The position numbers were made by a program, and so were the translations under genes. Below the pieces are notes generated by a model. It was not told the origin of the DNA and did not search any database. It was given only the letters and a program-made list of their open reading frames with translations. A DNA stretch of 64,000 nt from Octopus bimaculoides (lineage: Eukaryota), in contig NC_068981.1 in assembly GCF_001194135.2 (NCBI RefSeq), positions 198,887,315-198,951,314 of the forward strand, in the 5' to 3' direction. Below, in pieces: positions 601 to 60,480 of this stretch (its first letter is position 1; every line of letters starts with the position of its first letter).

Positions 601-3599
601 CTCCCAAAATTAAAAGAGATTGGGGTACTATTGATGTAAGGGGACTGGGACAACTCTATCAATGGTGATATAGTTGAAGACAATATAATCTCCAGTTATG
701 ACAACCACTTAAGAAGAAAATTGTTGCAATTTGTCACACTTCCTTGAAAACACCAACTGCTTAGATAAGACAATACTATTGGCACAAAGCTAAAAAAAAA
801 AAAACCCAAATACACTCTACATATTGATTATAGTGTGATACACCATTGCTCCAATCTGTGTTATAGAATGTTCTTGTGTAATTCCAGACAGTCAACAGTG
901 AGCCAATGGAAGGGCTGGGTATAAGTACCATGCATGTCCCTTGATGATGGGAGATAACACTCCAGATCTATGAGTTGATGACCCCACTGCATATTTCAGA
1001 ATGTGATCAAGGCTGTGGTGGTGGGCATCTAAGCAGTGTCAGCATGATGACAAAGTGAGTGAAGAGGATGGTGGGGCAGCCTTTAAAAGTTAACATTGTG
1101 ACAGTGGTGGAAGGGAAGAACGAGGAAGTTGAGACAACAGCTGATCAACATCTCAAGACATAAGGTTTCATACTTTAACAACTTGAGAATAATTTAGGAA
1201 TTCCGTACAAGAAAATAATGCAGTATAAAAATAGGGTTGGAAATTCAATGGGAAATATTGGATTGGAATATTTATGTCCAGTGAACTTCATCATGTCCTC
1301 TCCACCAACCACAGTCTGATGTGGAGGTCATAAATTTGAGATCATACTGATTTGGTGGGAAATATTAAAGAAATGATTATGAATGTTGTTGAGAAATAAT
1401 TATTTTGGCTTCTGTGTTCTGGTTGTAACTAAGGACATACAATTGTCAGTTTTTGAAACTTTAATTCTTAGTATCAGAAGTCAAAGTGAAAACCCAAGAG
1501 ACAAGATTAATTTATAATATTTTTATGTTTTGAAATATTCAACCTGGTTCGCAACTAGTCAACAGCTCACAACAGACTGACTGACAACAGATTGGTTCAC
1601 AAGAGATCGACTTATATTGTTAAATTTGAATCCAAACTTTTATGGATTAACAACTAACATTAGAAATGTCAAAATATAAAATAGATAAAGTGTTACACAT
1701 TAACAATGAAATATTCTTCACTGGAGAAGTTATTTTAAATGGATAACATTTTACTGTACAAAAAGTTTTGTGTTTTAAGGGATTATACAGTTACTATAAT
1801 GTTTTAAATGTACTTAGTGAATAAAATATTAAATAACAAACAATATGTAAAAAGGTTTGTCAGTCTGTCTTGTGGTCCCAATGGACAAAATGGGAAAGGC
1901 GTTGCCCTGGAGAGTGGCGAGGGAGATGCACTGGAACAGCCACTCTGACTCATGAGGCTTGCCGGTAGCAGTGAGCAGGGATGTGGCCCAGGGGAGACAC
2001 TGGAGGTCTCCACTGCCACAGGTTCAATCATGCTGTCGATCCACTTTTAACAATAATAGTTTAAGATTTAACCAGAAATATAACTATATCTGGATATCAC
2101 TTCATTGTTAATTACCGAATGAATAACATAATTATAAATTTGTTTTTATGGAACTTTTTAATTGGGTAAACATTAATGAAGGTGTTAAATACACTCAGTT
2201 ACATCTAACACTGAACATAAACTGACAATTATTACAAACAGTTTAATTATTGTTGCATCCATTTTGCTGACAGATTGTTGTGAATTAAATAAAAATATTT
2301 TGCCTTTGGAATGTGAACAAGAAGCTGAGTGAAGATTATGTGTGTAGTTTTAGAGAAAGTGAGAAATGACAGATAAAGTAAATTCATGAACAGTACAGAA
2401 AGTGTAGAGATTATCAATGTAGAAGACAAAGACATGGAATGACCGTTTGGCCTCATTCAGATTTTTTTCTGTTAAATGTTTATTTGTTCAGTGTTTTCAT
2501 CTAATCATTTATAATCTTGTAGCTTTGAGATTTTGATTATGTGATTGTATATTTTCAAAATGACATTGAAGGGTAGGTGCGAGAGGCCGGATCTGGACAG
2601 TTAGAACATAAACAGGTAGAATATTTGTGCTGGATATGGCCACATTGAATACTAAATGGTGAAAAGACATCTGGTGGTTCAGACTGACAAGATGAAGACA
2701 AAACAACTGAAAAGGTTTAGGAATTGGCTTTTACATTACGACATGTAAAATTCATTCAATAAATCTAGATATTTTAGTGATATGAATATTTATATATTCA
2801 TCATGGTACTTAATGTGGACTTAAATAGAAAAAGTTCTCACAGTCTCATTAAATACAAATAATATATTTACTAAACTTTTAGTTATTCATCTGAGCAGAA
2901 AAAGAGAAAAAAAAACTTCTTTTTCTTTTTGTTTTCCCAGCTTCAAATATTGGATGGTTGGTTTATTCTTCTTCATTGGATAATATCAAAGAGAAATCTA
3001 CAAATCTTTTTATCCAAAAAGAATGACTCCCAATTCAAGAATTGTATTGAAAAGGTCAGAGTTCTTTGTGGATGTTTCCTTTTTTCCTATTGCTATTTTG
3101 GCAAACAATTTCAATTGGTTCCGTTAGCAGCGAGAGTTCTACCGACATCTTCTTCTTCAGCTGCTAGTTCAACTAGTCTTTGATGTTTTACTAAGAATTT
3201 TATTCTCTATTTTGGTTTTGCTGTATTCCTGCTCCTTTCCACCGTTTTCTTTCTTGTCTACATTTCCACATAAAGAGTAAGGAGCAATCTGTTCATACAC
3301 AACAATACTAGGAGTACAGGCTAAACACTCTTTCAGAGTGGCCCCTAACAACTACAACAAAAATAACAACATGAAGGAGCTGTAAGGACTGTCTCTAATG
3401 CAAGGTTATTTCCCACTGAGATTGATGTGCTCATTACCAGATTTCGTAATAATTACATTATTCAGTTGTGTCAATTCCCATCCAAAGTCTCCAAAGTCCT
3501 TCAAGATTGTCATCCAAATCTTCGGGCCATTTATATCAACTTGGTTGGATCTCTGAATGTGATTTACTCTTTCATTTGTTTCAGTCATTTTTTACTGCG

Positions 3600-3951
3600 A
3601 CCATGCTGGAGCACTGCCTTTAGCTGAACAAATCAACCCCTGGACTTATTCTTTTGTAAGCCCGGTACTTATTCTATTCGTCTCTTTTGCCGAACCACTA
3701 AGTTATGGGAATGTAAGCACACCAACATCAGTGTCAAGCAATGGTGGGGTGGGGGTGGGGGACAAACACAGACACACAAATACATACACACACATGACAG
3801 GCTTCTTTCAGTTTCCGTCTTCCAAATCCACTCAAAAGGTTTTGGTCAGCCCAAGGCTATAGTAGAAGACACTTGCCCAAGGTGTCACACAGTGGGACTG
3901 AACCCAGAACCATGTGCTTGGGAAGCAAGCTTCTTACCACACAGCCATGCT
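3600..3951 (-). mobile_element. SINE family A copy
   Basis: Reverse complement of the family A motifs. Other copies at about 33990-34270 (+), 47120-47290 (-), 53240-53440 (+) and 61195-61275 (-). Confidence 0.8.
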
Positions 3952-4894
3952 TGTAAAATATTCTATTATCCCTTCCTGGATTGCTTTCAATGGATTGAGA
4001 GACATATTTCTCCATTGTTCATACAAGCACACAAATATACAAGACTTACATTGATTGACTAGAAAAAAAACAAAAAAACAACATACAAACTATTATCTCT
4101 GTTTAAGACTGATGGTAAACTGCCCTGGGAATTAATTATTATTTAAACAATGCAAGATAATTAAGATTCTCAAGAAATATGAATCCTGATAACAAAATTA
4201 ATGTATATTCAACAGAAGATGCAAAATTTTCGAAACAGTGTAAAAATTCTTGAAATAAATACATAATAATGACATTAGAAGTGACACTAAAGCACGACAC
4301 AGTGCTTGGGTCTCTCAGCTCCTATTAAATTGTCTAATCCATGCCAGTATGAAGCATGAATGTTTCAAATGGTGATGATGATGATAAAGCATTGATAAAG
4401 AATAAAGACAGTGAAAGAAATGGTGTTTTTGATGTCATCCTTTGAAAATATGCAAACGAAGGGAAGAATAGTATCTCATTTATTTATTTTTAAGTGTATC
4501 ATTTTTGTGTTGCTTTTAATTTGTGTGGTTGTTTGTCAAAGAAAGAAAACAAACCCACCTGATTGGAATACAAAATATTTCACTGATTAATAATGACTTT
4601 CAGAGAAATACTACAGAATCAGTGAACCCCTTCTCACCAAAAACTAGGCTGCTATTTCTACTACTACTACCATTCACATAATTTCTCCTCTCATCTATGC
4701 AAATAGATGATGTCAAATTAACTAACGAGAACAGCAAAACAAACATCTAGTTGGCAGCTTGCCAAGTTATACCTCCCATCTTACTCTTGTTTTTGACAAC
4801 TATATCCATAATTTAGGTAAAAATAGGGTGTTTGGCTGGGCTGGCAACAAAAGAGGTGTAGATCCATTCCCAAACACCACCGCTGGCGGCACAT

Positions 4895-5207: not shown

Positions 5208-6234
5208 CACAAAGTTTATATTTAATGATACAATAGCCTATGAGACTAGAAAGCAATAAACACCTTTAAGAAGATTAATAAATACAATATTTATTCATAA
5301 ACAACATGCACTTCTTTTTTCAGATTTAGAAAAATTTTAAACCTAAAATTATGAGGACACAGTTCCATAACAATTAAATATTATACAATGTTCCATGGAT
5401 CTATTCAATATGGTATGAATTGTCCAAGCTTACTGATGTGCATTGAAGAGTTTAAATCACAATTGATAATGTTAACAGTTCTCTATAACAGTAATTAATA
5501 CATCAAATATTCATTAGATTTCATAGGTTTATCCATAAATATCCAAGGTTGTTTACCATTTTACTAATGTACTGATACGATTCAGATGTAAAATGTAAAA
5601 CCAAAACAGAAAAAGTAATCTGATAGCTCTGCTTGAAGACCTATTCTTCTCCATCACCTTGGCAACACTGAAACCTCCTTTCTACCTACACTCTTTCCTT
5701 TTTTTTTTTTTTTTTTTAGTGGGGTTTCACTCCACCTAATACCAAACATAAGCAAACTTTGCAACCTCAGTTAACACAGATGTTTGTTTATACTATGATG
5801 GCAATGCTGTCACTAATCCAGTAATATTTTGTTACACAGCTCTGATGATTTGACAACGTAATTTGATTATAAAATTTAGCTAGGTGACCAAGTCAGCAGT
5901 GGAGGAGGATGCTCTGAGAGCATGGCTACTAGAATAAGANNNNNNNNNNNNNNNNNNNNNNNNNNNNNNNNNNNNNNNNNNNNNNNNNNNNNNNNNNNNN
6001 NNNNNNNNNNNNNNNNNNNNNNNNNNNNNNNNNNNNNNNNNNNNNNNNNNNNNNNNNNNNNNNNNNNNNNNNNNNNNNNNNNNNNNNNNNNNNNNNNNNN
6101 NNNNNNNNNNNNNNNNNNNNNNNNNNNNNNNNNNNNNNNNNNNNNNNNNNNNNNNNNNNNNNNNNNNNNNNNNNNNNNTTGTATGGTGATGTGATGTTAT
6201 AGGCAAGGACAGCTCCGTAAAAAAGTACTGATCT

Positions 6235-13288: not shown

Positions 13289-13340
13289 AGCAGCTACGTT
13301 ATCAACATCATCATCATCATCACTGTTTTAATGTCTGCTT

Positions 13341-13558
13341 AAGGCAGCGAGCTGGCAGAATCGTCTGCATGCCGGGCAAAATGCTTAGCATCATTTCGTC
13401 TGCCTTTACGTGCTGTGTCCAAATTCGGCCGAGCTCGACTTTGCCTTTCATCCTTTCGGGGTCGATAAATTAAGCACCAGTTGCATACTGGGGTCGATCT
13501 AATCGACTGGTCTCCTCCCCATGAAATTTCGGGCCTTGTGCCTTGAATAGAAAAGAGA
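13341..13558 (+). mobile_element. SINE family B
   Basis: gagctggcagaatc...caaattc.gccgag.tcgactttgcctttcatcctttcggggtcgataaattaag...agaaaag. Confidence 0.8.
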
Positions 13559-13577
13559 AGAATGTCTGCTTTGCGAT

Positions 13578-13600
13578 GCTTACCTGAAACAGATGGAATT
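13578..13600 (-). promoter_or_regulatory. Strong CAG|GTAAGC site (junction 13584/13583): recursive site or ordinary donor
   Basis: Minus strand TTCCATCTGTTTCAG|GTAAGC. Confidence 0.3.
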
Positions 13601-13911: not shown

Positions 13912-14550
13912 TTATTATTATTATCATTATTATTCAGCAGTCCTATTTTTATCACGTGCTTTCTCTACACTACCGAATGCAGCTCTGTGTGCCTTGGGTA
14001 CATGCTGTGGTTTGTTGTGCTGTTCTTATGTTCACTCTATTGAAAGTGTTTTCCATAGGATGTGTGTGGTGCCTAGTTGTACTCTTCCATAAGTCCTGGT
14101 GTTTTGGTTATGTATTTGTCTGAATATTTTTTTTTATCAGACCTAATGCACCTACTATAATAGGAATTGTTTCTCTTTTTAGACCCCACATTCGAGTTAC
14201 CTCTGTTTCTAGATCTTTGTATTTTGAGACTTCCTCCATTTCTTTTGGAGATACATTGTCATCTGTTGATGTGAAGAAATTTTTTTGCTTCATGATCTCT
14301 GACAACTATATCCAGTCTGTTAGCCTTGATTTCTCTATCTGTGTGTGTTGGCTTATCCCAGAGTATGGTCACTTTGTCATTTTCTGAGACCTTTTCCAGG
14401 ATATGCCTTCACCATATTTTTCTCTTCTCATTCCATAGTGTTGGCCTAATTTACAGTGTGTATAGGTCCCAACCATGTCCTGTCTGTAGATACATTCCTT
14501 CTTAGTCAGGACTGAGCAGCCAGAGACAATATCAGTTATTGTTTCTTCCA
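13912..14550 (-). mobile_element. 5'-truncated R4/Dong-like (RLE-endonuclease) non-LTR retrotransposon ending in a (TAA)n tract
   Basis: EETITDIVSGCSVL (CCHC region) and KYKDLETEVTRMWG...IPIIVGALG motifs; 3'UTR runs into (TAA)n. Confidence 0.8.
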
Positions 14551-14844: not shown

Positions 14845-15387
14845 ATATGAACATTAGGCCTCACGGAGGCAATGACTTGTGACTGAGACCTTTGGAAATA
14901 TGCTGTGTGTGAGAAGACCCGGCAAGCCAAGTGAGACCACAATCCGAGGCCTCTGCCNNNNNNNNNNACCCGGCAAGCCAAGTGAGACCACAATCCGAGG
15001 CCTCTGCCAGGGGTGTAGCCAGCCCACTTATGCGTACCTTTACTTCATTGGACACTAAAACTGCTTGCAAAGACCTGTTGAGGCAAGTGAACTTGAAATC
15101 GAACCAAATTCGACGACTGGCACACATGCCAACCTCTCCTTCATTGGACACTAAACTCGGCTTGCGAAGACCTGTTGGGGCAAATGAAATCCAAATCGTG
15201 ATGGCACGAGCACCGACCGAGTGTGATCATTGCCAGAGCAGCTGTCTGGCTTCCGTGCCAGTGGCACGTGAATAACACCGTTTGAGCATGGTCGTTACCA
15301 GCGTCACCTTATTGGCACTTGTGCTCGAGGCACGTGGAAAAAAACATTCGAGCAAGGTCGTTGCCAGTGCCGCTGGACTGGCTCCTG
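14845..15387 (+). mobile_element. RTE LINE 3' end (ORF end plus 3'UTR with internal tandem repeats)
   Basis: LGLTEAMT...DLWKYAVCEKTRQAK*, then duplicated ~90-bp cttcattggacactaaac units; homologous to 41280-41780 and 57415-57740. Confidence 0.8.
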
Positions 15388-16505
15388 NNNNNNNNNNNNN
15401 NNNNNNNNNNNNNNNNNNNNNNNNNNNNNNNNNNNNNNNNNNNNNNNNNNNNNNNNNNNNNNNNNNNNNNNNNNNNNNNNNNNNNNNCACACACACATAT
15501 ATATATATACACATACAACACACACATATGTATAGGTAGATAGGCACACACATCCCGCCCTACTAGAAACTCTATTTCTCTATTGTCATGTTACAACAAC
15601 ATCTGAATGCATGAATTAGAAAACACTGGAACAAAAATACCAGAAATATTTTTAGTTCAGTAGGAGAAAAAGAAGTGGCAGAGCAGGTGAATGGGTAGCA
15701 GTAGTGGTGGTGGTGGTGGTGCTGAAGGACTCCCAACAAGCAGAGAGTGGGGGCTGTGTTGTTAAAGCTGTGCACTGTACCTTCTGGTGAGGCAGTAAAA
15801 AGTTAGGAGATTTCACATTTGTCAACATGGCTGGGGGTGAGGGAATGGTGGCATGAAGCTTCTGAGAGATAAAAACGATTGTGAAGAAAGAATATGAGGC
15901 AGGTGTCAGATATATTCTTCAAACACTAAACACTATAAGCATGTGTGTGTGTGTGTGTGTGTACGCACATACACACACAGACAGATTTCTATGTTCGAGT
16001 CTATTTATGACAAACAAAAGATTAGCAAGTCTGTTTTTTCTTTTTTGTTAAACTATGGCCATGTTTATTTTTAGAAATAAAAAAAAACAAAAAAACTGAT
16101 TTAACAGTTTTTTTCTTCTAGACTAAATTATCAGATCTGGATAAAAACTTCAGTTATGGATTTAGAACATATCTGCAGAAAATAATTAAGTGAAGAAACA
16201 TCATCCGTAATTAAATTAGAACAGCGTACATTTATTCCACACCTGAGAAAATTTCATTACAGGACTAAAATGCAGCACACATAGTTGAACATTACTTCAC
16301 CATAGCAGTTTTGTGGATAAACCGGTTGTTAGATGTGGTTGGGGTGGGCCCTACATGGTGTGGACAGGGCTGTACAAAGTAAGTGACTAGGAGGGAAACT
16401 CACAACACTTTTGCTCAACAAAACAGAACAAATTTATTGGGGGAAAACTAGTTGTGTTGTGATTGACAGCAGACTGATTTGAACCAGGAAACTGTGATTT
16501 AAGTG

Positions 16506-16880
16506 TAAGCATGGCTGTGTGGTAAGAAGCTTGCTTCCCAACCACAGGGTTCCAGGATCAGACCCATTGTGTGGCACTTTGGGCAAGTGTCTTCTAGTAC
16601 AGCCTCAGGCTAACCAAAGCCATGAGCGGATCTAGTAAACAGAAACTGAAAGAAGCTCATTGTATGTGTGTGTGTATCTCTGTTTGCCCCCACCACTGTT
16701 TGAGAACCAATGTTGGTGTGTTTATGTCCTTGTGACTTGGTGGTTTGGCAAAAAAGATTGATAGAATAAGTACCAGGCTTAAAATAAAAATACAGGGGTC
16801 GATTCATTCAAGTAGAAATTCTTCAAGGCAGTGTGCCCCAGCATGGCCACAATCTAATGATAGAAACAAGTAAAAGATAA
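16506..16880 (+). mobile_element. SINE family A copy
   Basis: Homologous to 17882-18297. Confidence 0.8.
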
Positions 16881-16967
16881 AATATATTTATGTATTTCCC
16901 ACCAAACATAGTTTGTGGAACAAATTCTAGAGAAAGAGAAAGTGAGAAAAGACTTTGTCCAACTTAC

Positions 16968-17050
16968 CAATGGCATGTAAATAATATTGGAATGAATATT
17001 TGGGCTCCTGGCTCGGACACTTACCTGAAACACATTAGAAACATTAACTT
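16968..17050 (-). promoter_or_regulatory. Candidate recursive splice site (AG|GT junction at 17025/17024) with 57-nt cryptic RS-exon 17024-16968
   Basis: Minus strand reads AAGTTAATGTTTCTAATGTGTTTCAG|GTAAGT, followed 57 nt later by TTG|GTAAGT. Confidence 0.55.
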
Positions 17051-17709
17051 CAATACAAAATCAATAAAACATTGATAATATTAATTCATAACAAGACAAT
17101 ACTTTTACATAAGTTTAAAAAAAAACAAAATAGTTTTCTATTTTCAAAGATGGAATATTGATAAAAAGTATAATATTAGTAACAGATGCAGTGTTAATAG
17201 CAAAAATGGAGATATTTATCTCCACTCAAATGTGGATGTTCTGTTAGAACAAACTATACTGTAGCAAATATCACGAGAGAAACTCTCATATTGGCTTTTG
17301 GTGCAAAATGCAGGCTTCTTTATATCACTAGTGGGGAGATGAAATCCCCACTAACCCCAGCGCTGAGACCACCAGATCACATGATTTCGACCTTCCTTGG
17401 TCTTGTCAATGAAGGACACTTGACTACTAGAGACAGCAGTGATTCATCTCCCCACCAATGATATTATGTTCTTTTTTATGTGGCACCCTCACCAGTGTTT
17501 TTTAAATGGCACAACACACACAGGGTCACCAAATTCCTTGCCTCAGCCATGTCTAACAAAACTGTGTCATCTAGAAAAATCTTTAAGTCATATTTTAGGA
17601 CAGCCCATAGCCCACCCGAAGCAGAAGATGTTGACTGAAGTACATTTTTATCTAAATTTTAACTCTTTTGTTATCAACTCATAGTGTTTCACACAAACTT
17701 CTTGTTTTA

Positions 17710-17848
17710 AATTATTTACATTTGATGGATATTTGTCCTCATCTTGTTTGTTGTTAACACGTTTCTGCTGATATACTCTCCAGCCTTCTTCAAGTGTCCT
17801 GGGGAAATTTTGAACCTGGGTTCTCATTCCTAAGGTATTTTTCGATGC

Positions 17849-17879
<31 letters not shown>

Positions 17880-17880
17880 T
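17710..17880 (-). mobile_element. Single degenerate copy of the same Penelope-like repeat
   Basis: Matches the left arm of 41887-42030 and ends in (TTA)n; hammerhead core mutated (UUGAAGA). Confidence 0.75.
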
Positions 17881-17881
17881 C

Positions 17882-18052
17882 GTAAGAGTGGCTGTGTGGT
17901 AAGTAGCTTGCTTACCAACCACATGGTTCCGGGTTCAGTCCCACTGCGTTGCACCTTGGGCAAGTGTCTTCTACTATAGCCTCAGGCCAACCAAAGCCTT
18001 GTGAGTGGATTTGGTAGACGGAAACTGAAAGAAGCCCGTCGTATATATATAT

Positions 18053-18102
<50 letters not shown>

Positions 18103-18297
18103 TTGTTCCCCCAACATCACTTGACAACCGAAGCTGGTGTATTTACGTCCCCGTAACTTAGCGGTTTGGCAAAAGTGACCGATAGAATAAGTACTAGGCT
18201 TACAAAGAATAAGTCCTGGGGTCGATTTGCTTGACTAAAAGCGGTGCTCCAGCATGGCCGCAGTCAAATGACTTAAACAAGTAAAAGAGTAAAAGAG
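17882..18297 (+). mobile_element. tRNA-derived SINE family A, near full length
   Basis: A box TGGCTGTGTGG, B box GGTTCAGTCCC, core ttgggcaagtgtcttctactatagcc, internal (TA)/(TG) tract, tail aagtaaaagagtaaaagag. Confidence 0.85.
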
Positions 18298-19751: not shown

Positions 19752-20971
19752 CTGGGTCATCCCATAAATAATGTAGTTTTTTCATACTTTGTTTGTTTTT
19801 CAAAATTAAGATAAAGTTCTTTTTAAATCTAAAATATACTTTCCTTCAATTTCTACAATGCTTTTCCATCTAGTAGACTTGCAGGACCCCTTGTCTGTGA
19901 CGAAAAATTTACTTGTCCATAAGGAAATTCAAAATTCATTCATCTACAGAATTCATATTTTTTCCATTCAAACGATTTTGAAGACTGCAGAATAAATGAT
20001 AATCAGATGGGGCAATGTCCAACAAATATGGTGGGTAGGGCATTGTTTCCCATTCAAATTGTTCCAGCCTTTGGAATGTCATCCTCGCTATATGTGGCCG
20101 AGCATTATGATGATGGAAGAACACGTTTCCTCTTAAAACCAAAGATGGTTGTTTTTCTTCTGGCACTGACTTAAGCTGCTCACAGTAGATCTCCTTCATT
20201 ACTGTTTGGTTTGGGTTTAAAATTTCAAAGTGGACTAAACCTTTCACAACCCACCAAACAGATAACAGCACCTTACGTGGGTGAAGACCTTCTTTAGCCT
20301 GGGGTGCCAGTGTTTCTCCTTTCCCTACCCATTGTCTTTGGCGCTTGACATTTTTCGTCACAGTAACTATTTGGTCTAAAAACAGGTTCATTCGTGAGCC
20401 GTGGCAGCAAAGAAGAGCACACATTCACTCTCTGCATGCAATTAGACTCAGAAAGTTTGTGAGGAACCCATTGACCCAATTTGCTGACTTTTCTGATGGC
20501 ACGCAGGTGTTGATGAATGGTTGACTGACCAAATCCAAGCTTCTCTGCTAGTTCCTCAACAGTTACAATGGGAATTTTGTTCCACCGGGATTTGCAAGAC
20601 ATCTTTGTTGAGCTCTACAGATCTTCCAGGTCAAGGCTCATCTTCTAGGCAGTAGTTTCCCCGCATGGAATTTTTGGCTTACACTTATTGTCCGATCCCC
20701 ATATACTGTATTAACATTCCTTGCACTCTCTGTTGTGTTGTTGGCTTTATTGAATTCATAAAGCAAAATATGCTCTTTTGTCACTTTCATTATAGCTTTG
20801 AAAAAATAACTGTTAAAATCGAATTGCACTCTTCAAAACTTACACTAAGAATAAGGACAAGATAAAATTATTACCTGCTTTTACAGCAAGTTGATGCAGG
20901 TAATTTATCCTGTCCTCTGACTTTTAGTTCATGCAATTGAAAAAAATGGCATTATTTATGGGATGACCCAA
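19752..20971 (-). mobile_element. Full-length but inactivated mariner (Tc1/mariner, DD34D-type) DNA transposon, about 1.22 kb
   Basis: TIRs CTGGGTCATCCCATAAATAATG / CATTATTTATGGGATGACCCAA; TA on the left flank; transposase split over three frames with WVPHKL, HHHNARPH (from HHDNARPH) and YPPY..DIAPSDY motifs. Confidence 0.93.
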
Positions 20972-21930: not shown

Positions 21931-22160
21931 CTAGGTTGGTATCCAGGCACACAGCTGTCCCCTCTGTTGCTGTCACAGCATCTCTCTAGGAGAGGGAAAC
22001 TCTGAGAGAAAACCTGCAACACTGACAATATTCGATGAAGCAGACTAGTTCTTCTTTTTGAGTTTATGTTGTCCATGTTCAGAGAATGGGATTGGATTTG
22101 TGCAAATCCTTTCTCCACCATAAAAAAATCATCATGCACAGGCATCGAAAAAAGTAAGAC
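21931..22160 (-). CDS. Putative 230-nt internal exon (VLLFSMPVHDDFF...LLHRILSVLQVFSQSFPLLERCCDSNRGDSCVPGYQP, phase 0->2)
   Basis: Acceptor aattttgtgacAG with an in-frame TGA immediately upstream; 76 open non-repetitive codons (ORF track 21879..22145); probable donor AG|GTATTT (3' end less certain). Confidence 0.6.
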
Positions 22161-27307: not shown

Positions 27308-29723
27308 CAAATTGAACCTTAACTATAACAAACAATACAATGAATCAACACAGATCAGAGAATTTTTGATGGCTGTGGGCATGGCCTATCTTTTAGGCTA
27401 AATTAAAAATAGGTAACCAATTTTTTTCTCTCATTATAGAAAATTTAGCTCCAAAAACTTTTACCATTGCCTGACTTAAGATTAAGGTAGCAGATACTTG
27501 TATAAAGATGCTGTGCTATATTAACTTCTTGAGTAATCCCATGGCCATGTTTGTTCCCCTAATAACAAGAAAGAAAGCATCATTAAAAATCCCTTACAAA
27601 GATATTTCAAACTGAAAACAATCTGCCTTACAAAGACCGGTGGATTCAGTTTCAGCTATTTATACCAAGTGGTGATTGTTACAATGAAGCAACATCGGTA
27701 GAACCAGCCAACCCATGCCAATATGGAATATGGACATTAAATTAAGATTATGCTGATGATATGTGTGTGTGTGTGTCCCCTTTGTGTTGACTTCACATGA
27801 TGGCTGTGAATGAGCATTCTTACCATTTCCTGAGTGAATTATCCTCCTGTGAAATACAAGTCCAGCCATGGGGAAATATTACATTGCTTGGAAATAGGTG
27901 TTGGGTTGCAACAGAAAGGGAATCTGACTAGAAAATCTGCTTGAATAAATTCTGTCGGACCGATGCAAGTATGGGAAAGTGGTTGTTAAAATGATGATGA
28001 TGACGACTCTGGGTGTGTGTGTGGNNNNNNNNNNATAAGATGCTGTGTGTGTGTGTGTGGGGGGTGCAGTATAAGATGCTGTGTGTTTGTCTGGTGAATA
28101 AGTAAGATATAGAGTCGTGATGTGGAAGTACTACTAAAGTAGAGACATAGAAACAATGAACGTCTTCGTTACCCCAACAAAATACCAACAGAGAGTTAAT
28201 GTGTATTACTTAATTTAATTGTTTCACCATTGGCTACTTGTGAACAGCCTGTCATTATGTCTAGGAATTATTAAACCAGGATGGTTTTTAAGATAGGATA
28301 TCTGATTGCTGTTCCTAGCAAATAGAGTGACCACATAAAAGTTTGTTGGAACAAATACCAAAAACTGGGTTATGAAACTCACACAGTTGACAAACTTAGT
28401 TTCTGTTTGAAATCTTAGAACAGTAACATTGTTGAGCAACAGTTAAAGAATACCTAATATTGACACAATCAAACAACAGCGTTTCCAATCAAAGAATATT
28501 GGCTGACCAAATATCCGAGATCAATCAAAGAAAAAAAGAAAAGTCTACTGGACTAATGAGGTTGGAAGGAAGTTACTTGGTAGATTGAATGAGAAACCAC
28601 ATCAAAGAATAAGTTGTTAACAAGGTTCTGTGTTTACAAACAATTAACATTAGAGTGAAAGCAAGGAAATAAATGAAGAAATCTGCCTATTGGAATATGT
28701 ATTACAACAATATAAATCATAGAATATAAAGAGAATTCATTTAGGAAACAGCAAATGAAGAAAGACACCAGTGAAGAACTGTTGATTGGGTCAGTAAGTT
28801 AGACATTAATGTCTTCTGTTGACTGTTGGAAATAAAGGTAAATAGTATCAGACATTCTGAAAGTGGAATGATTTCCTTAACAAATGTTAGAATCAAGAAT
28901 AATTATTATAGTTGAAGGAAATTAGTGGTGGACCACTACCACTGCTATTTTGGCATGAGTTGGGTAGTTCTGTTTACCTGAATGGGTTTGGGAACTTGAC
29001 CTTACATGCAATTCATTTTGGCTTTGTTTCTAACATCATCCACTTTGAATTGGATGCTTTTTTTTTCTGGGCCTTCAGTACTTGAGAATTGTCATGTCCT
29101 TCACAGGATCGTTCATAGGTGTAGAAAATTTCTTTCTATAATAAAGCCACAACACATCTTTACTCAGATGTTTACATTTTATTGACCAAATCAATGTAAT
29201 TTTGTCCAGTTCTGGCCTTCCATATATTGTATATACAAAGAATGAATTTTGTGTGTATATTTAGAGTTGAACTCTTTATATAACCAAGATGTTCAGGTGA
29301 TCTGAAGAGCTAGCTTTCTTTATTTGCGTTAATTTGTGAATATACAATTCTATTGTATAATGCTGAGCAAACATATTAGTGCAAACACGCAGGCATAATT
29401 TCTGGCAAACGAAAATTAATGCTACATATAAAAGTTGTGAAACATCTGTAAACCTAATGAAGTCATGTGATTAAATAAATCTATATTCACCTATTGTACC
29501 TCCTGACTTAGATTTTAATATACACCTCACAAAATAATTTTATCACTCACATTTTTTGGATTTTCCATTGGTTACATGGACACGTTTTTAATTGGATACC
29601 ACAAGGACTGATAGTCAAGTTTGTAAAAGAAGCTCCCAGTGATAGCTGTGCAGTTAGCTGAAGCCATATTTTACACTACTCATTTCTATATATTTTAAAG
29701 AGGTCTTAGGCCATCAGACATTA

Positions 29724-38249: not shown

Positions 38250-38750
38250 NNNNNNNNNNNNNNNNNNNNNNNNNNNNNNNNNNNNNNNNNNNNNNNNNNN
38301 NNNNNNNNNNNNNNNNNNNNNNNNNNNNNNNNNNNNNNNNNNNNNNNNNNNNNNNNNNNNNNNNNNNNNNNNNNNNNNNNNNNNNNNNNNNNNNNNNNNN
38401 NNNNNNNNNNNNNNNNNNNNNNNNNNNNNNNNNNNNNNNNNNNNNNNNNNNNNNNNNNNNNNNNNNNNNNNNNNNNNNNNNNNNNNNNNNNNNNNNNNNN
38501 NNNNNNNNNNNNNNNNNNNNNNNNNNNNNNNNNNNNNNNNNNNNNNNNNNNNNNNNNNNNNNNNNNNNNNNNNNNNNNNNNNNNNNNNNNNNNNNNNNNN
38601 NNNNNNNNNNNNNNNNNNNNNNNNNNNNNNNNNNNNNNNNNNNNNNNNNNNNNNNNNNNNNNNNNNNNNNNNNNNNNNNNNNNNNNNNNNNNNNNNNNNN
38701 NNNNNNNNNNNNNNNNNNNNNNNNNNNNNNNNNNNNNNNNNNNNNNNNNN
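38250..38750. other. Assembly gap (representative)
   Basis: N runs at 5940-6178, 14958-14967, 15388-15487, 28025-28034, 38250-38750 and 48570-49040. Confidence 1.
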
Positions 38751-44699: not shown

Positions 44700-45470
44700 T
44701 ACTGGCTTTATTCCTTGCAAGTTTACGCATGTCCTCAGCAGTCACCGCTCATGTTTCACTGCCATGAAGCATGGCTGTTCATACACATGCGTCATACAGT
44801 CTGCCTTTTACTCTGAGCGAGAGGCCCTTTGTCACCAGCAGAGGTAGGAGCTCCCTGAACTTTGCCCAGGCTATTCTTATTCTAGCAGCTACACTTTCAG
44901 AGCACCCACCCCCACTACTGACTTGGTCACCTAGGTAATGGAAGCTATCAACTACTTCTAGTTTTTTCTCCGTGGAATGTGACAGAAATTGTTCTCTGCA
45001 CATTTCCAGTGTTTATTGCTCCTGAGCATCTGCCACACACAAAAACTATCTTCCCAGTTAGCCTTCCTTTGATATTGCTGCACCTCTTATGTGCCCATAG
45101 CTTACACTGGGTACATTTTATAGATGAGCAGGGCCATCTACCTGAAGGAATTTGTGGTTTGTCTGCCCTCCTACTTATTAAGATTTGGATTTAGCTAGGT
45201 TGACTCTAAGACATCCTGTCTTGAATTCCTCTGTTATTGCCTGGAGGACTATGATAAATAGGAGGGGGCTGAGGACTGAACCTTGGTGGATCCCTACCTC
45301 TACCTGGGATTCTTCACTGTATTCATTAGCGTCCCTGTACATGGCTCGCACAGCTCTCACTAACCACTCATCTGTCCCTAGTTTCCACATTGACCACCAG
45401 ATAAGAGATCGGGGGACCCTGTTGAAGGCTTTCTCCATGTCAACGAAAGCCAGGTACGGAGTTTTTAAAT
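44700..45470 (-). mobile_element. Internally deleted RTE LINE fragment
   Basis: MEKAFNRVPRSLIWWSM, GIHQGSVLSPLLFIIVL and RIRIAWAKFRELLPLL motifs; the YADD segment is deleted. Confidence 0.9.
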
Positions 45471-45967
45471 ACTGGACTAAACTTTGAACTTTTGACCTTT
45501 ATACTGTCAAAGCGAAGGATTAAACCCAATAAACCCGAAAATAACTAAAACTATTGGCACATCCTGAACTTACATGTAAGTCTAGGAACCACTTTTGTGA
45601 ACCACTAACAACAATCTCATGACCTGAAGTGGACACACATAAATAGACAAACCTGTTTATAAAGTTTATATACATGAATAAATGCTAAACAATAAGAACT
45701 TCTCCAAAACACCTCTCTACCACACCCCACCCTACAACCTAATTACCCGCCACTCAAACCCCACACACCAAAGGAAGATTTTAACTCAATAGAGACTATA
45801 TAAAGCCAAGATTAACTTCAATGCATCACAGTCCAAAACTCTGAAATCACTGTCAATGATATTATTGTTAAAGAACAATAAATCTGTATTCTACAGAATA
45901 TAGAGTTACCAATCGGATTAATGTAAAATTGTTTATATTATAACTGAACTTTGAAGTAAACATTAAG

Positions 45968-46665: not shown

Positions 46666-48059
46666 GGTGCTTTATTCATGGCAGTTGAAATCTTCATAAC
46701 TGCGTTACAAAATGAGTCATTGATAATTGAAAATGTGATTGATGCCAGTTAAATATTAGAGTCAAAAGACTACGACAATTTACCATTTGTTGCAATAATA
46801 AGACAGAGGCCAGATTGGTTTACAGCAAAAGTCTGTAAATGTTACATGAAACAATGACACAAGACAACATTCTAATTCAGAAATACAGACATACATCACC
46901 ATTATCAGTGTTTAATGTCCACTTTTCCATGTTTGCATGGATCAGGCAGAATCTGTTAAGGCAGATTTCCTATGGCGGGATGCCCTTCCTGTCACCAATC
47001 CTCACTTATGGCCAGACATGGTTTTCATGGAAGACTAGAAACAAACAACCTCACTTGTATCATGGTGATGCTTGCTCACATCATGAGATGTCTAGATAAG
47101 GGTACACACAAACACAGAGACACCCATAAGACAGACTTCTTTCAGCTTCGGTCAACCAGAGACATCGTTCAAGGCTTTGTTCAGCTGAGAGCCATGGTAG
47201 AAGACACTTGCCCAAGGTGCCACACCGTGGGAATGAACTGGAGACTTCACGTTTGGGAAGAAAGCTCCTTAACCACACAGCCACACTTGCACTGAACCAG
47301 GAAGGAGAAAATAGTGTTGGAAGAGAGAAGAAGAAGAGAGAGGAAACAAAAGAGAGAAAAACCATTCTGTGAGGTGAGAAGAGAGAGAAAGAGAGCAAAG
47401 AAAGAAAGACTTTGAAAGAAGAGCATCATGCATTCGGCATTCCGACAGGATACACCTACAATCTACAGATAGTTAGATTGGAAACGGATTACCATGTCCA
47501 TTCTTCATGAAATGTTCATGTAGGTCTCAGGTTTCCGGCAACAATAGAAAACAGTGAGGGCTGGTAATGCTACTGTAGCAGAAAGACAAACATTGGTGGT
47601 TGAACTTTAAAATAAGCCAGAAATTATAATGAATAGAAATATAAACTAATTAGAATATCTGATGACTTCTATGTTAATACTTTTCAAAAGACTTCAGATA
47701 TAAGAACACATTTCTAAAGAAGTTACTGGGTTCATAAATAACTGAGCTGCTAAATTCTATAATTATTTACAACAATCAGTCATTTATTGATTGGAATGTT
47801 TTGATTGATCATTATATCTACATTACAGAGAAATACCTTTCGTTTTACCATGTTGCTGAAGAGGTCACAAATGGCAATGAAGGGATTTTGGCAAACACAA
47901 CAGACTGATTGATAAACCAAATGATTAATCAAACAACTGATTAGTTGGTAGATTAAATTACTAAGCAATTGACCAAAAAAATAAAGAAGTGAAACAGAAA
48001 CGGTGCGTGTGTTTATTATTGGCATAATGACCCTCTCAAGATAAGTATCATGTGTGTGT

Positions 48060-48540: not shown

Positions 48541-49251
48541 TGTGTGTGTATATATATATATATATATATNNNNNNNNNNNNNNNNNNNNNNNNNNNNNNN
48601 NNNNNNNNNNNNNNNNNNNNNNNNNNNNNNNNNNNNNNNNNNNNNNNNNNNNNNNNNNNNNNNNNNNNNNNNNNNNNNNNNNNNNNNNNNNNNNNNNNNN
48701 NNNNNNNNNNNNNNNNNNNNNNNNNNNNNNNNNNNNNNNNNNNNNNNNNNNNNNNNNNNNNNNNNNNNNNNNNNNNNNNNNNNNNNNNNNNNNNNNNNNN
48801 NNNNNNNNNNNNNNNNNNNNNNNNNNNNNNNNNNNNNNNNNNNNNNNNNNNNNNNNNNNNNNNNNNNNNNNNNNNNNNNNNNNNNNNNNNNNNNNNNNNN
48901 NNNNNNNNNNNNNNNNNNNNNNNNNNNNNNNNNNNNNNNNNNNNNNNNNNNNNNNNNNNNNNNNNNNNNNNNNNNNNNNNNNNNNNNNNNNNNNNNNNNN
49001 NNNNNNNNNNNNNNNNNNNNNNNNNNNNNNNNNNNNNNNNGAGTGTAATCATTACCAGCGTCGCCTTCTAGCACTTGTGCTGGTGGCATGTTAGAAAATC
49101 ATTCGAGCAAGGTCATTGCCAGTGCCGCTGGACTGGCTCCCGTACAGGTGGCACGTAAAAAACACCATTTTGAGCGTGGCTGTTGCCAGTACCGTGTGAC
49201 TGGCCCCCGTGCCAGTGGCACATAAAAGCACCCACTACACTCATCATCATC

Positions 49252-52563: not shown

Positions 52564-55500
52564 CTGCATTTAAATTCAATCGTATCAAAATTCAAAATGA
52601 TGTGCCAAGATTTCGCCTATCAGCTGTTCAAACTGGTCGTTTTAGATTTAACTTTTAAATGCCTGTCAGCAGTGTATCTAAATATTTCTGAGAGAGAGAA
52701 TCAAACAAATAAGTTTTGCGATTCTTGTGAACAGTGAATATAAAAATATAATAAACACATGACAAATAGGTCTGGTTGGAGATGACACTCCAATGAATTT
52801 ATTTAATGAAGGTAATCAAGGAAGAGGTAGACCCAGGAAGACATGGGATGAAGTGGTAAGGACTGATCTCAGGAAGTTGGACCTCATGGAGGAAATGACC
52901 ATGGACCGAGATGTTTGGTGATATGAAGTTCTTGAGAAGACCCATCCATGTCAGTGGAGCTGAGTTCTAGAAGTGCTGTGTAGAAAACTTCTCACACATT
53001 CTACCACAATGAACCAAACTACATCCCTTCTCTTCCTCACATTTCTGCAAGAGTACATTCATGTACTTTTTGATTACCTCCCACTCCCCAATCTCGTCCT
53101 CTTGGCCTGGTGCCACTTGCTCTCTGCTTGCTCCCGACCTGTGCGTTCTATCCACATGTCTTGTCTCACTCTATTATTGCCATCTGCTGCCCCCCGACCT
53201 GGGTGTTCCACCCACACATAACAAGATAATTCATATATCTATGAATGTGTGTGTTTTTGTGGTCTGCATTTGTCCTCCACTACTGCTTGGCAACTGGTGT
53301 TGGCGTGTTTACGTCCCCATAGCTTAGTGGTTTGTAAATACCAAGTTTAAAAAACAAAAATGGGGGTGATTCATTTGACTAAAATTCTTCAAAGTGGTGC
53401 CCAAGCATGGCCACAGACTGAAACAAGTAAAAGAATAAAAGAACTAAATATTAGCAAGGAGTTGATCCGAGCATCATTCCAATAAATGTTTCAATTTTCT
53501 CCCCTCTACAAACCATAATTTTTTTTTTCTTCTTTTTTTTTTTTGTTGCTTTCCTAGAATATAATTGTTTCTCTGTATTATACATATCTGTATCATCAAG
53601 TGACAGGGTTTCACCATAAAAAGCGTTATTTATTTATCTTATTTTCTGCAAATCAATAAAACTTTTTTTTTTTCTGAAGGTTAACTGGAAACATTCAGAA
53701 ACAATGGCAATAAAAATACAATACATTATTGTCTCTGTAAGAGAGACATTAGTGACTGGAAGTGTAATTAATGATGCTTCAACCAACCTGCAGCAAAAAC
53801 TGAGGTGAATCCCATCATTTGGAGCTACTCCCATATCAGGGTCGGTCCTGCTTTTATACATACAAACATCCAGGACAGTGTCTTATATATACACAAAAAA
53901 GGAAAAAAGTCACCCAACAAACTGACAGAGTCACTCATTGACACTTTCCGGTCCTTTCACTGCCTTTCCTCTGCCTCCTCCCACAACTGCTGTTATTGCT
54001 ACAACAATGGCCTATTCTCCTCAGTCCACTGAGGAGCATGTTGCATTCCCTCATCTCAACCCTACCAGTTTCAATTTCAGCTATTTTGCCAATACTACTT
54101 CCCCTGCATTACATCCCTCTGGAATTCCTTCACATATAATTTTATAATGAACAGGCAGAGTCAGAATGCTTGTAAAACAACAATACGTGAACAAGATGTT
54201 TATCTAGTCTATATTAGCATAGAAAAATGTTAAAGAATTAAATGGAGAAACATATAAAGTTGGTTCTTGTGAGATTTTACATTATGAAACAACGAAGAGG
54301 AAAGCAGAATGTTTAAAGTATGAATCAAGATGATATAAAATGAATTTAAATAATTCTTACTGATGATATATAAATGCATCAGTGGTAACCACCACCACTG
54401 CCACCACCACCAGCCCTTGAATATCTTAGTTGGGCACACTCTCTTACAAGCAATCAGACTAATCCTGTTATCTAATCAGAAATACAACACCAAGAATGAT
54501 TTAGAATGCTATGAAAACAAGACCAGGATTCAGAACTTTCAACTAAAAGAGAATCTGGTAAGAATTTTTAATTTGCAGACGAACTTATTTTCTAAGAAAA
54601 AATTAGGATATTATTAACTCCGGTGTGATATTACTTATGATGCCACCTGGCAGGAATTTTGCTACAGCAGTGAAGAATGAATTGAAACCAGAAGTGTTTA
54701 GAAGTTGGGAATCAATTAGGGAATTCAGCTAATGGAATAGGAGAGAGAAGAAAAGAGATATACATAGCTAGATGATGTTAATTAATGGCACATTGCAGTC
54801 TTCTAGGCCATTGGATCTACCCTGTTGAACAGTCCAACCCATGCCAGCAAGGAAAGCAGATGTTAAAGGAGGATGATGATGATATTGGAAGAACTGAACC
54901 AGTAATATTTTGGCAATATTGAAACTATATCAAAGCAACTGAATAATTTCAAGAGGGTCATTTTTTTTTGCCAGATACACACAGGCACTCTAGATTTTTT
55001 TTCTTCACTCGTTTATTACTGTTCTTATTTTATTATTTTAACTCATGTCCAGACAATGGACAAGAGTTAAAATAATGAAAGAAGAATAGGAATGAAAGAG
55101 TGAAGAAAAAAGATATATTTATATATATATAGTATGTGTGTTTATTTGGCAAAGAAAAAGATAAAAAGTACCATCCCCGAAATACAACAATATTTGTTTC
55201 AACACACAATTTCACAGCAGGATCAAGATGAATGAATAATTTCATATATATTGAAAATCCATGACAACTGGATATGAATATTTAACATTTTTATAAGACT
55301 GAAACTATATCGAAATACCTGGACTGTTGCTTGAAAACTTCCAGGAAATTCAACACAAACTCCGAGGTTATTCAGTGTGGTAGAAATAACAGCCAAATCT
55401 TCTTCAAGCCAGACTCTAATGTCTGGACAAAGGATGATATTAGGTTATGTAGTCCAAGGTACACTCAACCTAACAAAAAAGTTGGGTGGTCATGGTTAGA

Positions 55501-59039: not shown

Positions 59040-59120
59040 TGTTCACTGTAAACCTATTAGTACTCCATTCTCAACATCAATTACTGTACTCTTACCTGAA
59101 AATACAGAAACACATAAATA
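59040..59120 (-). promoter_or_regulatory. Candidate recursive splice site (junction 59096/59095)
   Basis: Minus strand TATTTATGTGTTTCTGTATTTTCAG|GTAAGA; possible second donor CA|GTGAGG 56 nt downstream. Confidence 0.4.
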
Positions 59121-59521: not shown

Positions 59522-60095
59522 ATTCATCATCATCATTTAACATCCGTCTTCCATGCTGGCATGGGTTGGGCGGTTTGACTGCGGACTGGCAAGACAGGAG
59601 GTCGCACCAGGCTCCAATCGGATCTGGTGATATTTTTGTAATTCGACAGTTCATCTAAATGCACATTGCACAATGCTCACTTCCAGGTACCCAAGTGTGA
59701 GTTTAAAAAAAAATTTTTTTTTTAACTGGTACTACCTGTAGGCAGTAAGTTCCACTCCCTCCAGGAGTTTTCCTGTCCTGCTAATGGGCTTGAGTGTTGT
59801 TTGCAATTGATTGTGTTCAATTGGGGGTGCTTCCCGAAGAAGGCAGTGTAGTATCCTTTGCTGAGGGTTTAACACTACTAGACTGAGTTGCTGTCACTGC
59901 TGCGGATTATGGAGGTGGTAGTGATGCTGGCTGGTGCGATTTTGTGGTTTGCTGGTATGATGGAGGAGGAGGTGGCTGGGAGAGAGAGATCCAGCGGACG
60001 CCCAACTGGATCTCTGGTCTTGAAGGTGTAATGTGGATGTGCAATGGTGGAGCTGGCTGGTGTGATGATGATGGCAGCTGGTGTGGTGGTCTTCC

Positions 60096-60480
60096 TCACA
60101 GTACTTCACGGTACACAATGTCTTGTGTGGATGTCACACCACATTTTTGGCCTTGTCTGTGAGCGTGATGGAGTGCCATGACTCTTACTCTGATATTGTT
60201 CATAGCTTCTGCTCTTGAAAATGCGACATGTATTTGGCCACGAGAAAATATCAGTTGAGGCAAATGTATTCCAACTTATTCAAATGTTTGCCCTTGAGTC
60301 TTATTAATTGTCATTGAAAATGCAAGTCAAAGTGGAAACTGAAGTCTGTTTAGTGTGAATGGAATATTTGCATCACTTAGGCTAAGTTTAATTCTGGGAA
60401 TTAGAACTGTACGACCTCTGTTGCAGCCTGTTACCAATGATGCCTCTTCGCACCTTCATGCGAGTTCCATTACACAATGC
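60096..60480 (-). pseudogene. Second Helitron helicase C-terminal remnant
   Basis: LCNGTRM; VTGCNRGRTVLIPRIKLSLSDANIPFTLNRLQFPL*LAFSMTINKTQGQTFE*VGIHLPQLIFSRGQIHVAFSR...IVYREVL*, with stops and a frameshift. Confidence 0.9.

What the first reader, a model, noticed from the sequence alone, without database searches (positions are those of the whole stretch)
16968..17050. Textbook recursive-splice-site architecture with a 57-nt poison RS-exon in a long intron
Seen: the minus strand reads T-rich tract, TTAAT/CTAAT branch-like motifs, GTGTTTCAG|GTAAGT, then 57 nt later a second consensus donor TTG|GTAAGT. It is on the same strand as the traced exons and 4.9 kb downstream of the 21931 exon. If included after that phase-2 exon it would read AG|G TAA, an immediate stop. 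Established: Drosophila ratchet points and vertebrate RS sites have this layout of a 3' splice site that regenerates a 5' splice site, followed by a short cryptic exon with its own donor. Inference: this gene may be spliced recursively. I am not aware of recursive splicing being characterised in molluscs, but could not check the literature.
Basis: partly seen in the sequence, partly recalled or inferred. Interest (0 to 1): 0.75.

Follow-up and report, generated by a model that had tools for sequence, protein, structure and literature searches.

The report
Unverified recursive splice site motif
The sequence really contains a textbook-looking recursive splice site, but no gene, transcript or conservation evidence could be found around it, so it is a candidate at best and may be a rare chance motif in repeat-rich non-coding DNA.

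Summary
On the minus strand, TTTCAG (AG at 17026-17025) abuts GTAAGT (17024-17019). Exactly 57 nt later comes TTG|GTAAGT (16967-16962).

It is rarer than chance within one window. The core is expected 0.08 times and the full layout about 0.003-0.009 times per 64 kb. Across a genome of gigabases, which I assume here, that still predicts roughly a hundred or more chance copies. The site lies in 824 bp with no paralogue in the window, between two SINE-like repeats.

The gene context did not hold up. Pfam scans of both strands and three searches of 5.8 billion proteins found only transposon domains. The "21931 exon" has no homologue and a weak donor. The "immediate stop" depends on an unverified reading frame. 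The segment is 3x19 nt and open in the other two frames.

Two observations weakly favour minus-strand transcription. A second similar site lies at 59096 on the same strand, and unique DNA shows a consistent T>A excess on that strand.

RNA data and orthologous sequence were out of reach. Verdict: observation confirmed, interpretation cannot be decided. I put a genuine recursive site at about 0.27. If real, it would be a new member of a known kind. No paper in the searched library describes recursive splicing in molluscs.

The parts
17026..17050 (-). 3' splice-site-like region. It holds TTAAT (17047-17043, branch-like A at -20), CTAAT (17038-17034), a moderate pyrimidine tract, TT at -5/-6 and CAG ending at 17025.
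   Evidence: Read directly. The acceptor PWM score is in the top 7.3% of the 3616 AG sites on the minus strand. No AG lies between the -20 A and the acceptor AG.
17019..17024 (-). GTAAGT immediately after the AG. This is the 5' splice site that would be regenerated after splicing to an upstream exon.
   Evidence: It is the only AGGTAAGT on either strand of the window. Its donor PWM score is 12.9 bits, the best on that strand. With the preceding CAG it has full 9-nt complementarity to the U1 5' end, a point I take from established knowledge.
16968..17024 (-). 57-nt candidate cryptic (RS) exon.
   Evidence: One search gives the length as 57 nt. Two frames are open (VSVRARSPNIHSNIIYMPL and KCPSQEPKYSFQYYLHAI). 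The stop occurs only in the G|TAA frame. Neither peptide has a homologue at E<=10.
16962..16967 (-). Second donor, TTG|GTAAGT, which would define the 3' end of the candidate RS-exon.
   Evidence: It scores 8.46 bits, weaker than the upstream donor. Published models expect this for RS-exons that are skipped (PMC8605326).
21931..22013 (-). It is unverified.
   Evidence: The donor scores only 3.4 bits. No homologue was found and no Pfam hit.
16499..16883 (.). SINE-like repeat copy flanking the site on its 3' side in the minus-strand sense. It ends 79 nt (16884-16962) short of the second donor.
   Evidence: Self-BLAST finds copies at 3562-3952, 17882-18294, 47109-47296 and 53242-53440.
17708..18296 (.). 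Repeat block on the other side of the site. The 824 bp between the two repeat blocks (16884-17707) has no paralogue in the window.
59040..59120 (-). Second recursive-site-like locus on the same strand. It reads tgtgtttctgtattttcAG(59096)|GTAAGA, with a weak donor ACA|GTGAGG 56 nt downstream (GT at 59039).
   Evidence: It ranks first of the 387 AGGT sites in the window by summed acceptor and donor score; 17025 ranks second. It is not homologous to the 17025 site.

Best explanation
Most likely this is an unselected, fortuitous juxtaposition of a moderate 3' splice-site-like sequence, a perfect 5' splice-site hexamer and a second donor 57 nt downstream. It sits in repeat-rich non-coding DNA whose transcription and strand are unknown.

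As DNA it does nothing. If the minus strand is transcribed as part of a long intron, the spliceosome would be expected to define the 57 nt as a pseudo-exon. It would join it to the upstream exon and then reuse the regenerated CAG|GTAAGT donor. The site would then behave as a recursive site whether or not it was selected for that. The presence of the motif is shown. Everything about its use is inferred.
For: No recognisable host gene was found:
- Pfam on minus-strand open segments from 64 kb down to about 3.4 kb (>=30 aa) and on plus-strand open segments from 1 to 47 kb (>=50 aa) gave only mariner and reverse-transcriptase domains.
- Three searches of 5.8 billion protein clusters found nothing. 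They used the '21931 exon', both open frames of the 57 nt, and all unique open segments of 40 aa or more.
- No ORF from the window is on record.

The chance rate of the full layout is 0.003-0.009 per 64 kb. That is on the order of 100-400 chance sites in a 2-3 Gb genome, so a genome scan will meet such sites without any function. The core 8-mer itself is at or below expectation (1 observed against 1.43 expected).

The pyrimidine tract next to the AG is only moderate (12/17). Drosophila ratchet points have unusually prominent tracts (10.1101/006163).

The supposed first intron segment is only 4.9 kb. About 1.5 kb or more of it is mariner and SINE-like repeats recognisable in the window. Published recursive sites lie mostly in introns longer than 40-50 kb (10.1101/2024.12.11.627982).
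Against: The combination is rare for a single window (0 of 100 shuffles).

It meets the fine details of known sites. TT at -5/-6 is found in 99.5% of fly ratchet points. The upstream donor is stronger than the downstream one. The cryptic exon is about 50 nt.

A second, non-homologous site with the same layout lies on the same strand at 59096. With relaxed thresholds I observed 2 on the minus strand and 0 on the plus strand. Simulation gave a mean of 0.075 per strand and P(>=2) of 0.003. The thresholds were set after seeing the data.

Unique DNA shows T>A on the minus strand (skew 0.039, z 6.4, 14 of 16 blocks). That is the direction seen on the sense strand of mammalian introns.

The site is not part of any repeat in the window.
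Confidence: 0.5

Rival explanations
1. This is a genuine intronic recursive splice site (ratchet point) with a 57-nt cryptic RS-exon, inside a very long intron of a minus-strand gene whose exons lie outside the window or are too short or divergent to detect.

The 57 nt would be defined as an exon by its 3' splice site and the 16967 donor, then ligated to the upstream exon. The regenerated CAG|GTAAGT donor would outcompete the weaker TTG|GTAAGT donor, so the segment is skipped and the intron is removed in two or more steps. The site at 59096 would be another step.
For: The motif grammar matches published sites. The layout is rare by chance within one window. A second similar site lies on the same strand. 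T>A asymmetry is present on the minus strand. The DNA is single-copy within the window. A 64-kb stretch without detectable exons is what a giant intron would look like.
Against: There is no evidence that the region is transcribed or that it is an intron. The only proposed upstream exon is unsupported. The pyrimidine tract is moderate. Conservation and RNA evidence are not available. The thresholds in my enrichment tests were set after seeing the sites. Strand asymmetry has not been established for this taxon, and the G/C skew that accompanies it in mammals is absent.
Confidence: 0.27
2. This is a conventional short exon that merely begins with GTAAGT. It could be a frame-preserving 57-nt alternative cassette exon, or a non-coding exon of a UTR or lncRNA. 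That would make it an expressed 'RS-exon' in the sense of Blazquez et al. (2018), which is sometimes included in mRNA.
For: The length is 3x19 nt and two of three frames are open. Both flanking splice sites are plausible. The phase-1 frame of the 55-nt upstream segment reads through it without a stop.
Against: Neither peptide has any homologue. No neighbouring exons were detected. Nineteen codons open in two frames is weak evidence on its own.
Confidence: 0.13
3. The segment belongs to an unrecognised transposable element or other multicopy sequence that happens to carry splice-like motifs. The layout would then be a property of the repeat family and not of this locus.
For: About a quarter of the window is repeated within the window itself. 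The site sits between two SINE-like copies and 3 kb from a mariner element. A family present once per 64 kb would escape a search within the window.
Against: No paralogue of 16884-17707 exists in the window. There is no transposon protein domain or open reading frame there. An exact scan of metagenome contigs with the 27-mer found nothing, although that collection is uninformative for an animal genome.
Confidence: 0.07

Closest known systems
Drosophila intronic ratchet points with cryptic RS-exons (Ubx, kuz, Bx; Hatton 1998, Duff 2015, Joseph 2018/2021)
   Same: It has a juxtaposed acceptor and donor, TTTCAG|GTAAGT, with TT at -5/-6. It has a short cryptic exon (57 nt here, about 50 nt in flies). 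It has a downstream donor weaker than the regenerated one, which predicts complete skipping (PMC8605326; 10.1101/006163).
   Different: Fly ratchet points are ultraconserved. They have very prominent pyrimidine tracts, lie in known long introns (mostly over 40 kb) and have junction and lariat support. None of this is shown here, and the tract is only moderate. Fly cryptic RS-exons are usually out of frame, whereas this one is a multiple of three.
Vertebrate recursive splice sites with RS-exons (Sibley et al. 2015)
   Same: It has the YAG|GT core, RS-exon definition by a downstream donor, and a possible premature stop on inclusion that would act as a quality-control switch (summarised in PMC5126111).
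   Different: Vertebrate sites were found from RNA data in very long introns of brain-expressed genes, and they are conserved. Here the host gene, expression and conservation are all unknown. The stop exists in only one of three phases.
Expressed or annotated RS-exons repressed by the exon junction complex (Blazquez et al. 2018, PMC6224609)
   Same: It would be an exon whose first bases recreate a 5' splice site after ligation.
   Different: Those are annotated, mostly constitutive exons seen in mRNA. No transcript evidence exists for this segment.
Pseudo-exons and cryptic splice-site pairs in long introns (for example DMD pseudoexons, PMC7175933)
   Same: It is a pair of plausible splice sites bounding a short non-conserved segment deep in non-coding DNA, arising by chance and normally silent.
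   Different: Ordinary pseudo-exons do not usually start with a perfect GTAAGT directly after the acceptor AG.

Membership tests
Intronic recursive splice site (ratchet point + cryptic RS-exon) | Acceptor AG directly followed by a consensus donor (YAG|GTAAGT or GTRAGT) | tested here: met
   TTTCAG|GTAAGT at 17030-17019 on the minus strand.
Intronic recursive splice site (ratchet point + cryptic RS-exon) | Strong 3' splice-site context: TT at -5/-6, a prominent pyrimidine tract, and a branch point with no intervening AG | tested here: inconclusive
   TT at -5/-6 is present. TTAAT has its A at -20 with no AG downstream of it. The tract is only 12/17 pyrimidines and the PWM score is in the top 7% of AG sites. 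Fly sites have more prominent tracts.
Intronic recursive splice site (ratchet point + cryptic RS-exon) | Downstream donor that defines a short RS-exon and is weaker than the regenerated donor | tested here: met
   TTG|GTAAGT lies 57 nt downstream. It scores 8.5 bits against 12.9 bits for the regenerated donor.
Intronic recursive splice site (ratchet point + cryptic RS-exon) | Lies on the sense strand inside a long intron of an expressed gene | tested here: inconclusive
   No host exon was detectable on either strand. The only hints of minus-strand transcription are indirect: the T>A skew and a second site on the same strand.
Intronic recursive splice site (ratchet point + cryptic RS-exon) | Evolutionary conservation of the AG|GT junction above its flanks | not testable with these tools
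   No related animal genome could be reached. The collections are prokaryotic, viral or metagenomic. The protein-based route failed for lack of any protein hit.
Intronic recursive splice site (ratchet point + cryptic RS-exon) | RNA evidence: exon-to-site junction reads, recursive lariats, saw-tooth coverage | not testable with these tools
Poison (NMD-triggering) exon | Inclusion introduces a premature stop or a frameshift in the host reading frame | tested here: inconclusive
   Length 57 = 3x19, so there is no frameshift. A stop (TAA) arises only if the upstream exon ends in phase 2. The other two phases read through. The host frame is unverified.
Multicopy repeat / transposable element | Additional copies elsewhere, or transposon protein domains | tested here: not met
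   No paralogue of 16884-17707 exists in the window and there is no transposon domain. Genome-wide copy number was not testable.

The most novel reading that the evidence does not exclude
The site at 17025, and perhaps its look-alike at 59096, is a functional zero-nucleotide recursive splice site in a giant intron of a mollusc gene. That would be the first such site described outside arthropods and vertebrates. It would imply that ratchet-point splicing with cryptic RS-exons is ancestral to bilaterians or recurs wherever introns become very long.
Probability: 0.25. Interest if true: 0.55.

Novelty: new member of a known kind. Interest (0 to 1): 0.25.

Why it matters
Recursive splicing has been documented in flies, mice and humans. 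My searches of the literature library found no description in molluscs.

Large, intron-rich invertebrate genomes are a natural place to ask two questions. Is stepwise intron removal a general solution to long introns? Is the fly-type motif (TT at -5/-6, CAG|GTAAGT, a cryptic exon of about 50 nt) conserved across bilaterians?

A validated site would make that testable at a defined locus. A single unvalidated motif does not. Its main value is as one entry in a genome-wide census: counts of such sites on the sense versus antisense strand of annotated long introns, checked against total RNA-seq.

Tried and rejected
1. Finding the host gene by domain search. I ran Pfam on minus-strand open segments of 30 aa or more, from 64 kb down to about 3.4 kb. 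I also ran it on plus-strand segments of 50 aa or more from 1 to 47 kb. Only mariner (Transposase_1, HTH_48) and RVT_1 were found.

2. Finding the host gene by homology. I searched with the '21931 exon' plus both open frames of the 57 nt. I then searched with pseudo-proteins of all unique open segments of 40 aa or more. There were no hits. Short or divergent exons would escape these searches.

3. Reaching the locus in public assemblies through exact ORFs. None is on record, so no orthologous DNA and no conservation test were possible.

4. A simple splice-site and ORF exon finder, and inspection of GC-rich unique islands in six frames. Nothing looked convincingly coding.

5. Rfam and tRNA scans for intronic RNAs or SINE heads. 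None were found. The plus-strand reading ACTTACCTG resembles the U1 5' end, but the flank does not match and Rfam found nothing.

6. Testing whether the three AG|GTAAG sites on the minus strand are copies of one element. They are not.

7. An exact 27-mer scan of metagenome contigs. It found no match, and the collection is uninformative for an animal genome.

Full report
**What is there.**
Read on the minus strand, the window contains ...gaagTTAATgtttCTAATgtgtttcAG|GTAAGTgtccgagcc...catgccaTTG|GTAAGTtgg.
- The acceptor AG is at 17026-17025.
- The GTAAGT that would be regenerated as a donor is at 17024-17019.
- The second donor GT is at 16967-16966.
- The piece between them, 17024-16968, is exactly 57 nt.

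Two details need correcting. The obvious T-rich run (17130-17117) is about 95 nt upstream of the AG. The tract next to the AG is only 12/17 pyrimidines. Also, the 57 nt is a multiple of three and is open in two of three frames (VSVRARSPNIHSNIIYMPL and KCPSQEPKYSFQYYLHAI). Only the G|TAA frame has a stop.

**How good are the signals.**
I used a simple position-weight model.
- The regenerated donor scores 12.9 bits, the best on its strand.
- The downstream donor scores 8.5 bits.
- The acceptor falls in the top 7.3% of the 3616 AG sites on the minus strand.

TT occupies -5/-6, as in 99.5% of Drosophila ratchet points (10.1101/006163). TTAAT places an A at -20 with no AG between it and the acceptor. 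The order of donor strengths, upstream stronger than downstream, is the one that predicts skipping of the cryptic exon (PMC8605326). At the level of sequence grammar the resemblance to known recursive sites is real.

**Is it more than chance.**
- AGGTAAGT alone is not unusual. It occurs once, against 1.43 expected.
- YYYCAGGTAAGT occurs once against 0.08 expected.
- The core plus GGTRAGT 30-60 nt downstream appeared in 0 of 100 shuffles.
- At the observed strengths, a second-order Markov model gives 0.0033 full layouts per window.
- A null that keeps the real sequence, using 560 decoy 8-mers of the same composition, gives 0.0089.

The layout therefore turns up by chance in about one window in 100-300. 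That is striking for one window. In a genome of 2-3 Gb, a size I assume for illustration, it means roughly 100-400 chance copies. The motif alone cannot carry the claim.

**Repeats.**
Self-comparison shows the site lies in 824 bp (16884-17707) with no paralogue in the window. It is flanked by a SINE-like element (16499-16883, with other copies at 3562-3952, 17882-18294, 47109-47296 and 53242-53440) and a repeat block at 17708-18296. A decayed mariner element (19936-20829; Transposase_1 and HTH_48) lies between the site and 21931. Genome-wide copy number could not be tested.

**The gene context.**
This part of the finding did not hold up.
- Pfam scans found only transposon domains. They covered minus-strand open segments from 64 kb down to about 3.4 kb (>=30 aa) and plus-strand segments from 1 to 47 kb (>=50 aa).
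- A search of 5.8 billion protein clusters with the '21931 exon' and both frames of the 57 nt found nothing at E<=10.
- Searches with all unique open segments of 40 aa or more found nothing at E<=0.01. They covered the whole minus strand and the plus strand from 15.8 to 24 kb.
- No ORF from the window is on record in the assemblies index.
- Rfam and tRNA scans were empty.
- The donor at 21931 (CTAG|GTATTT) scores only 3.4 bits.

The window is either part of a very long intron or intergenic. I cannot say which. Short or fast-evolving exons would have escaped these tests.

**The 'poison' claim.**
After ...CCT AG at 21931 the junction would indeed read AGG TAA. That holds only in the phase-2 frame. 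With the acceptor at 21987/21986, the 55-nt 'exon' is open in a second frame. That frame continues through the 57 nt as GKCPSQEPKYSFQYYLHAI without a stop. Because 57 is divisible by three, inclusion would not shift the frame. The label is conditional on an unverified exon and an unverified frame.

I ranked all 387 AGGT sites in the window by summed acceptor and donor score. The top two are both on the minus strand. The first is 59096 (tgtgtttctgtattttcAG|GTAAGA), with a weak donor ACA|GTGAGG 56 nt downstream. The second is 17025. The two are not homologous.

With thresholds relaxed to include both, I observed 2 on the minus strand and 0 on the plus strand. Simulation gave a mean of 0.075 per strand and P(>=2) of 0.003. 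Those thresholds were chosen after seeing the data, so this is a hint only.

In repeat-masked DNA the plus strand has A>T (skew +0.039, z 6.4, 14 of 16 four-kb blocks). That means T>A on the minus strand. From memory, this is the direction reported for the sense strand of mammalian introns (Green et al. 2003; Touchon et al. 2003). It has not been established for this taxon, and the accompanying G>C skew is absent.

**Weighing the explanations.**
The fraction of such sites that are real equals true sites divided by true plus chance sites. Chance sites number perhaps 100-400 per genome. If this genome holds a few hundred consensus-strength recursive sites, as flies do, a randomly met site would be real with probability of roughly one third to one half. 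That figure is then discounted because we do not know that the region is transcribed on the minus strand. It is raised slightly by the second site and the strand skew.

My estimates are:
- about 0.27 for a genuine recursive site
- about 0.13 for a conventional short exon that starts with GTAAGT
- about 0.07 for an unrecognised repeat
- about 0.5 for an unselected chance motif

If the minus strand is transcribed through this point, even an unselected site would probably be used to some extent, because exon definition needs nothing more than what is present.

**Comparison with known systems.**
The closest relatives are Drosophila intronic ratchet points with cryptic RS-exons and vertebrate recursive sites with RS-exons. 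The motif-level features of that class are met. The features that actually define it are location in a sense-strand long intron, conservation and RNA intermediates. These were inconclusive or untestable here. Published sites lie mostly in introns over 40-50 kb (10.1101/2024.12.11.627982).

**Novelty.**
Full-text searches found no paper that describes recursive splicing in molluscs. 'Recursive splicing' with 'octopus' gave 0 papers. With 'mollus' it gave 2 papers that each mention both terms only once, neither in title or abstract. With 'cephalopod' it gave 1 paper that holds both terms only in its reference list. If validated, the site would extend a known mechanism to a new phylum. That is a new member of a known kind and of moderate interest. 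As it stands it is a well-formed candidate without supporting evidence.

Noticed in passing
window 59040-59120 (minus strand): A second recursive-site-like locus reads tgtgtttctgtattttcAG(59096)|GTAAGA, with a weak donor ACA|GTGAGG 56 nt downstream. It is the best-scoring AG|GT junction in the window, lies on the same strand as the finding and is not homologous to it.
   Followed up: partly
window 13560-13600 (minus strand): A third junction, tctgtttcAG(13584)|GTAAGC, lies 28 nt from the edge of a repeat copy (13307-13556). It has no strong downstream donor and is probably incidental.
   Followed up: partly
window 19936-20829 (minus strand): A decayed mariner/Mos1-type transposon has its transposase split over three ORFs (Pfam Transposase_1 at 2e-17, HTH_48 at 3e-06).
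   Followed up: yes
window 45181-45498 (minus) and 62295-63500 (plus): These are reverse-transcriptase fragments of non-LTR retrotransposons. RVT_1 was confirmed for the first. The second, and RT C-terminal remnants near 14000-14500 and 59300, were recognised by eye only.
   Followed up: partly
window 3562-3952, 16499-16883, 17882-18294, 47109-47296, 53242-53440: A SINE-like repeat family of about 400 bp has at least five copies at 68-74% identity to the 16499-16883 copy. About 24% of the window is repeated within the window.
   Followed up: partly
window ~59700-60200 (minus strand): Open segments resembling the C-terminal part of a PIF1/Helitron-type helicase (…GRTVLIPRI…, …SRGQIHVAFSR…) were recognised by eye. 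Pfam did not report them.
   Followed up: no
whole window, unique DNA: A consistent A>T excess on the plus strand (skew +0.039, 14 of 16 four-kb blocks) occurs without any G/C skew. It may be a transcription-associated asymmetry pointing to minus-strand transcription.
   Followed up: partly
window 5940-6178, 14958-14967, 15388-15487, 28025-28034, 38250-38750, 48570-49040: There are six runs of N (assembly gaps), several of them next to microsatellites. (TG)n and (TA)n tracts are abundant throughout the window.
   Followed up: no
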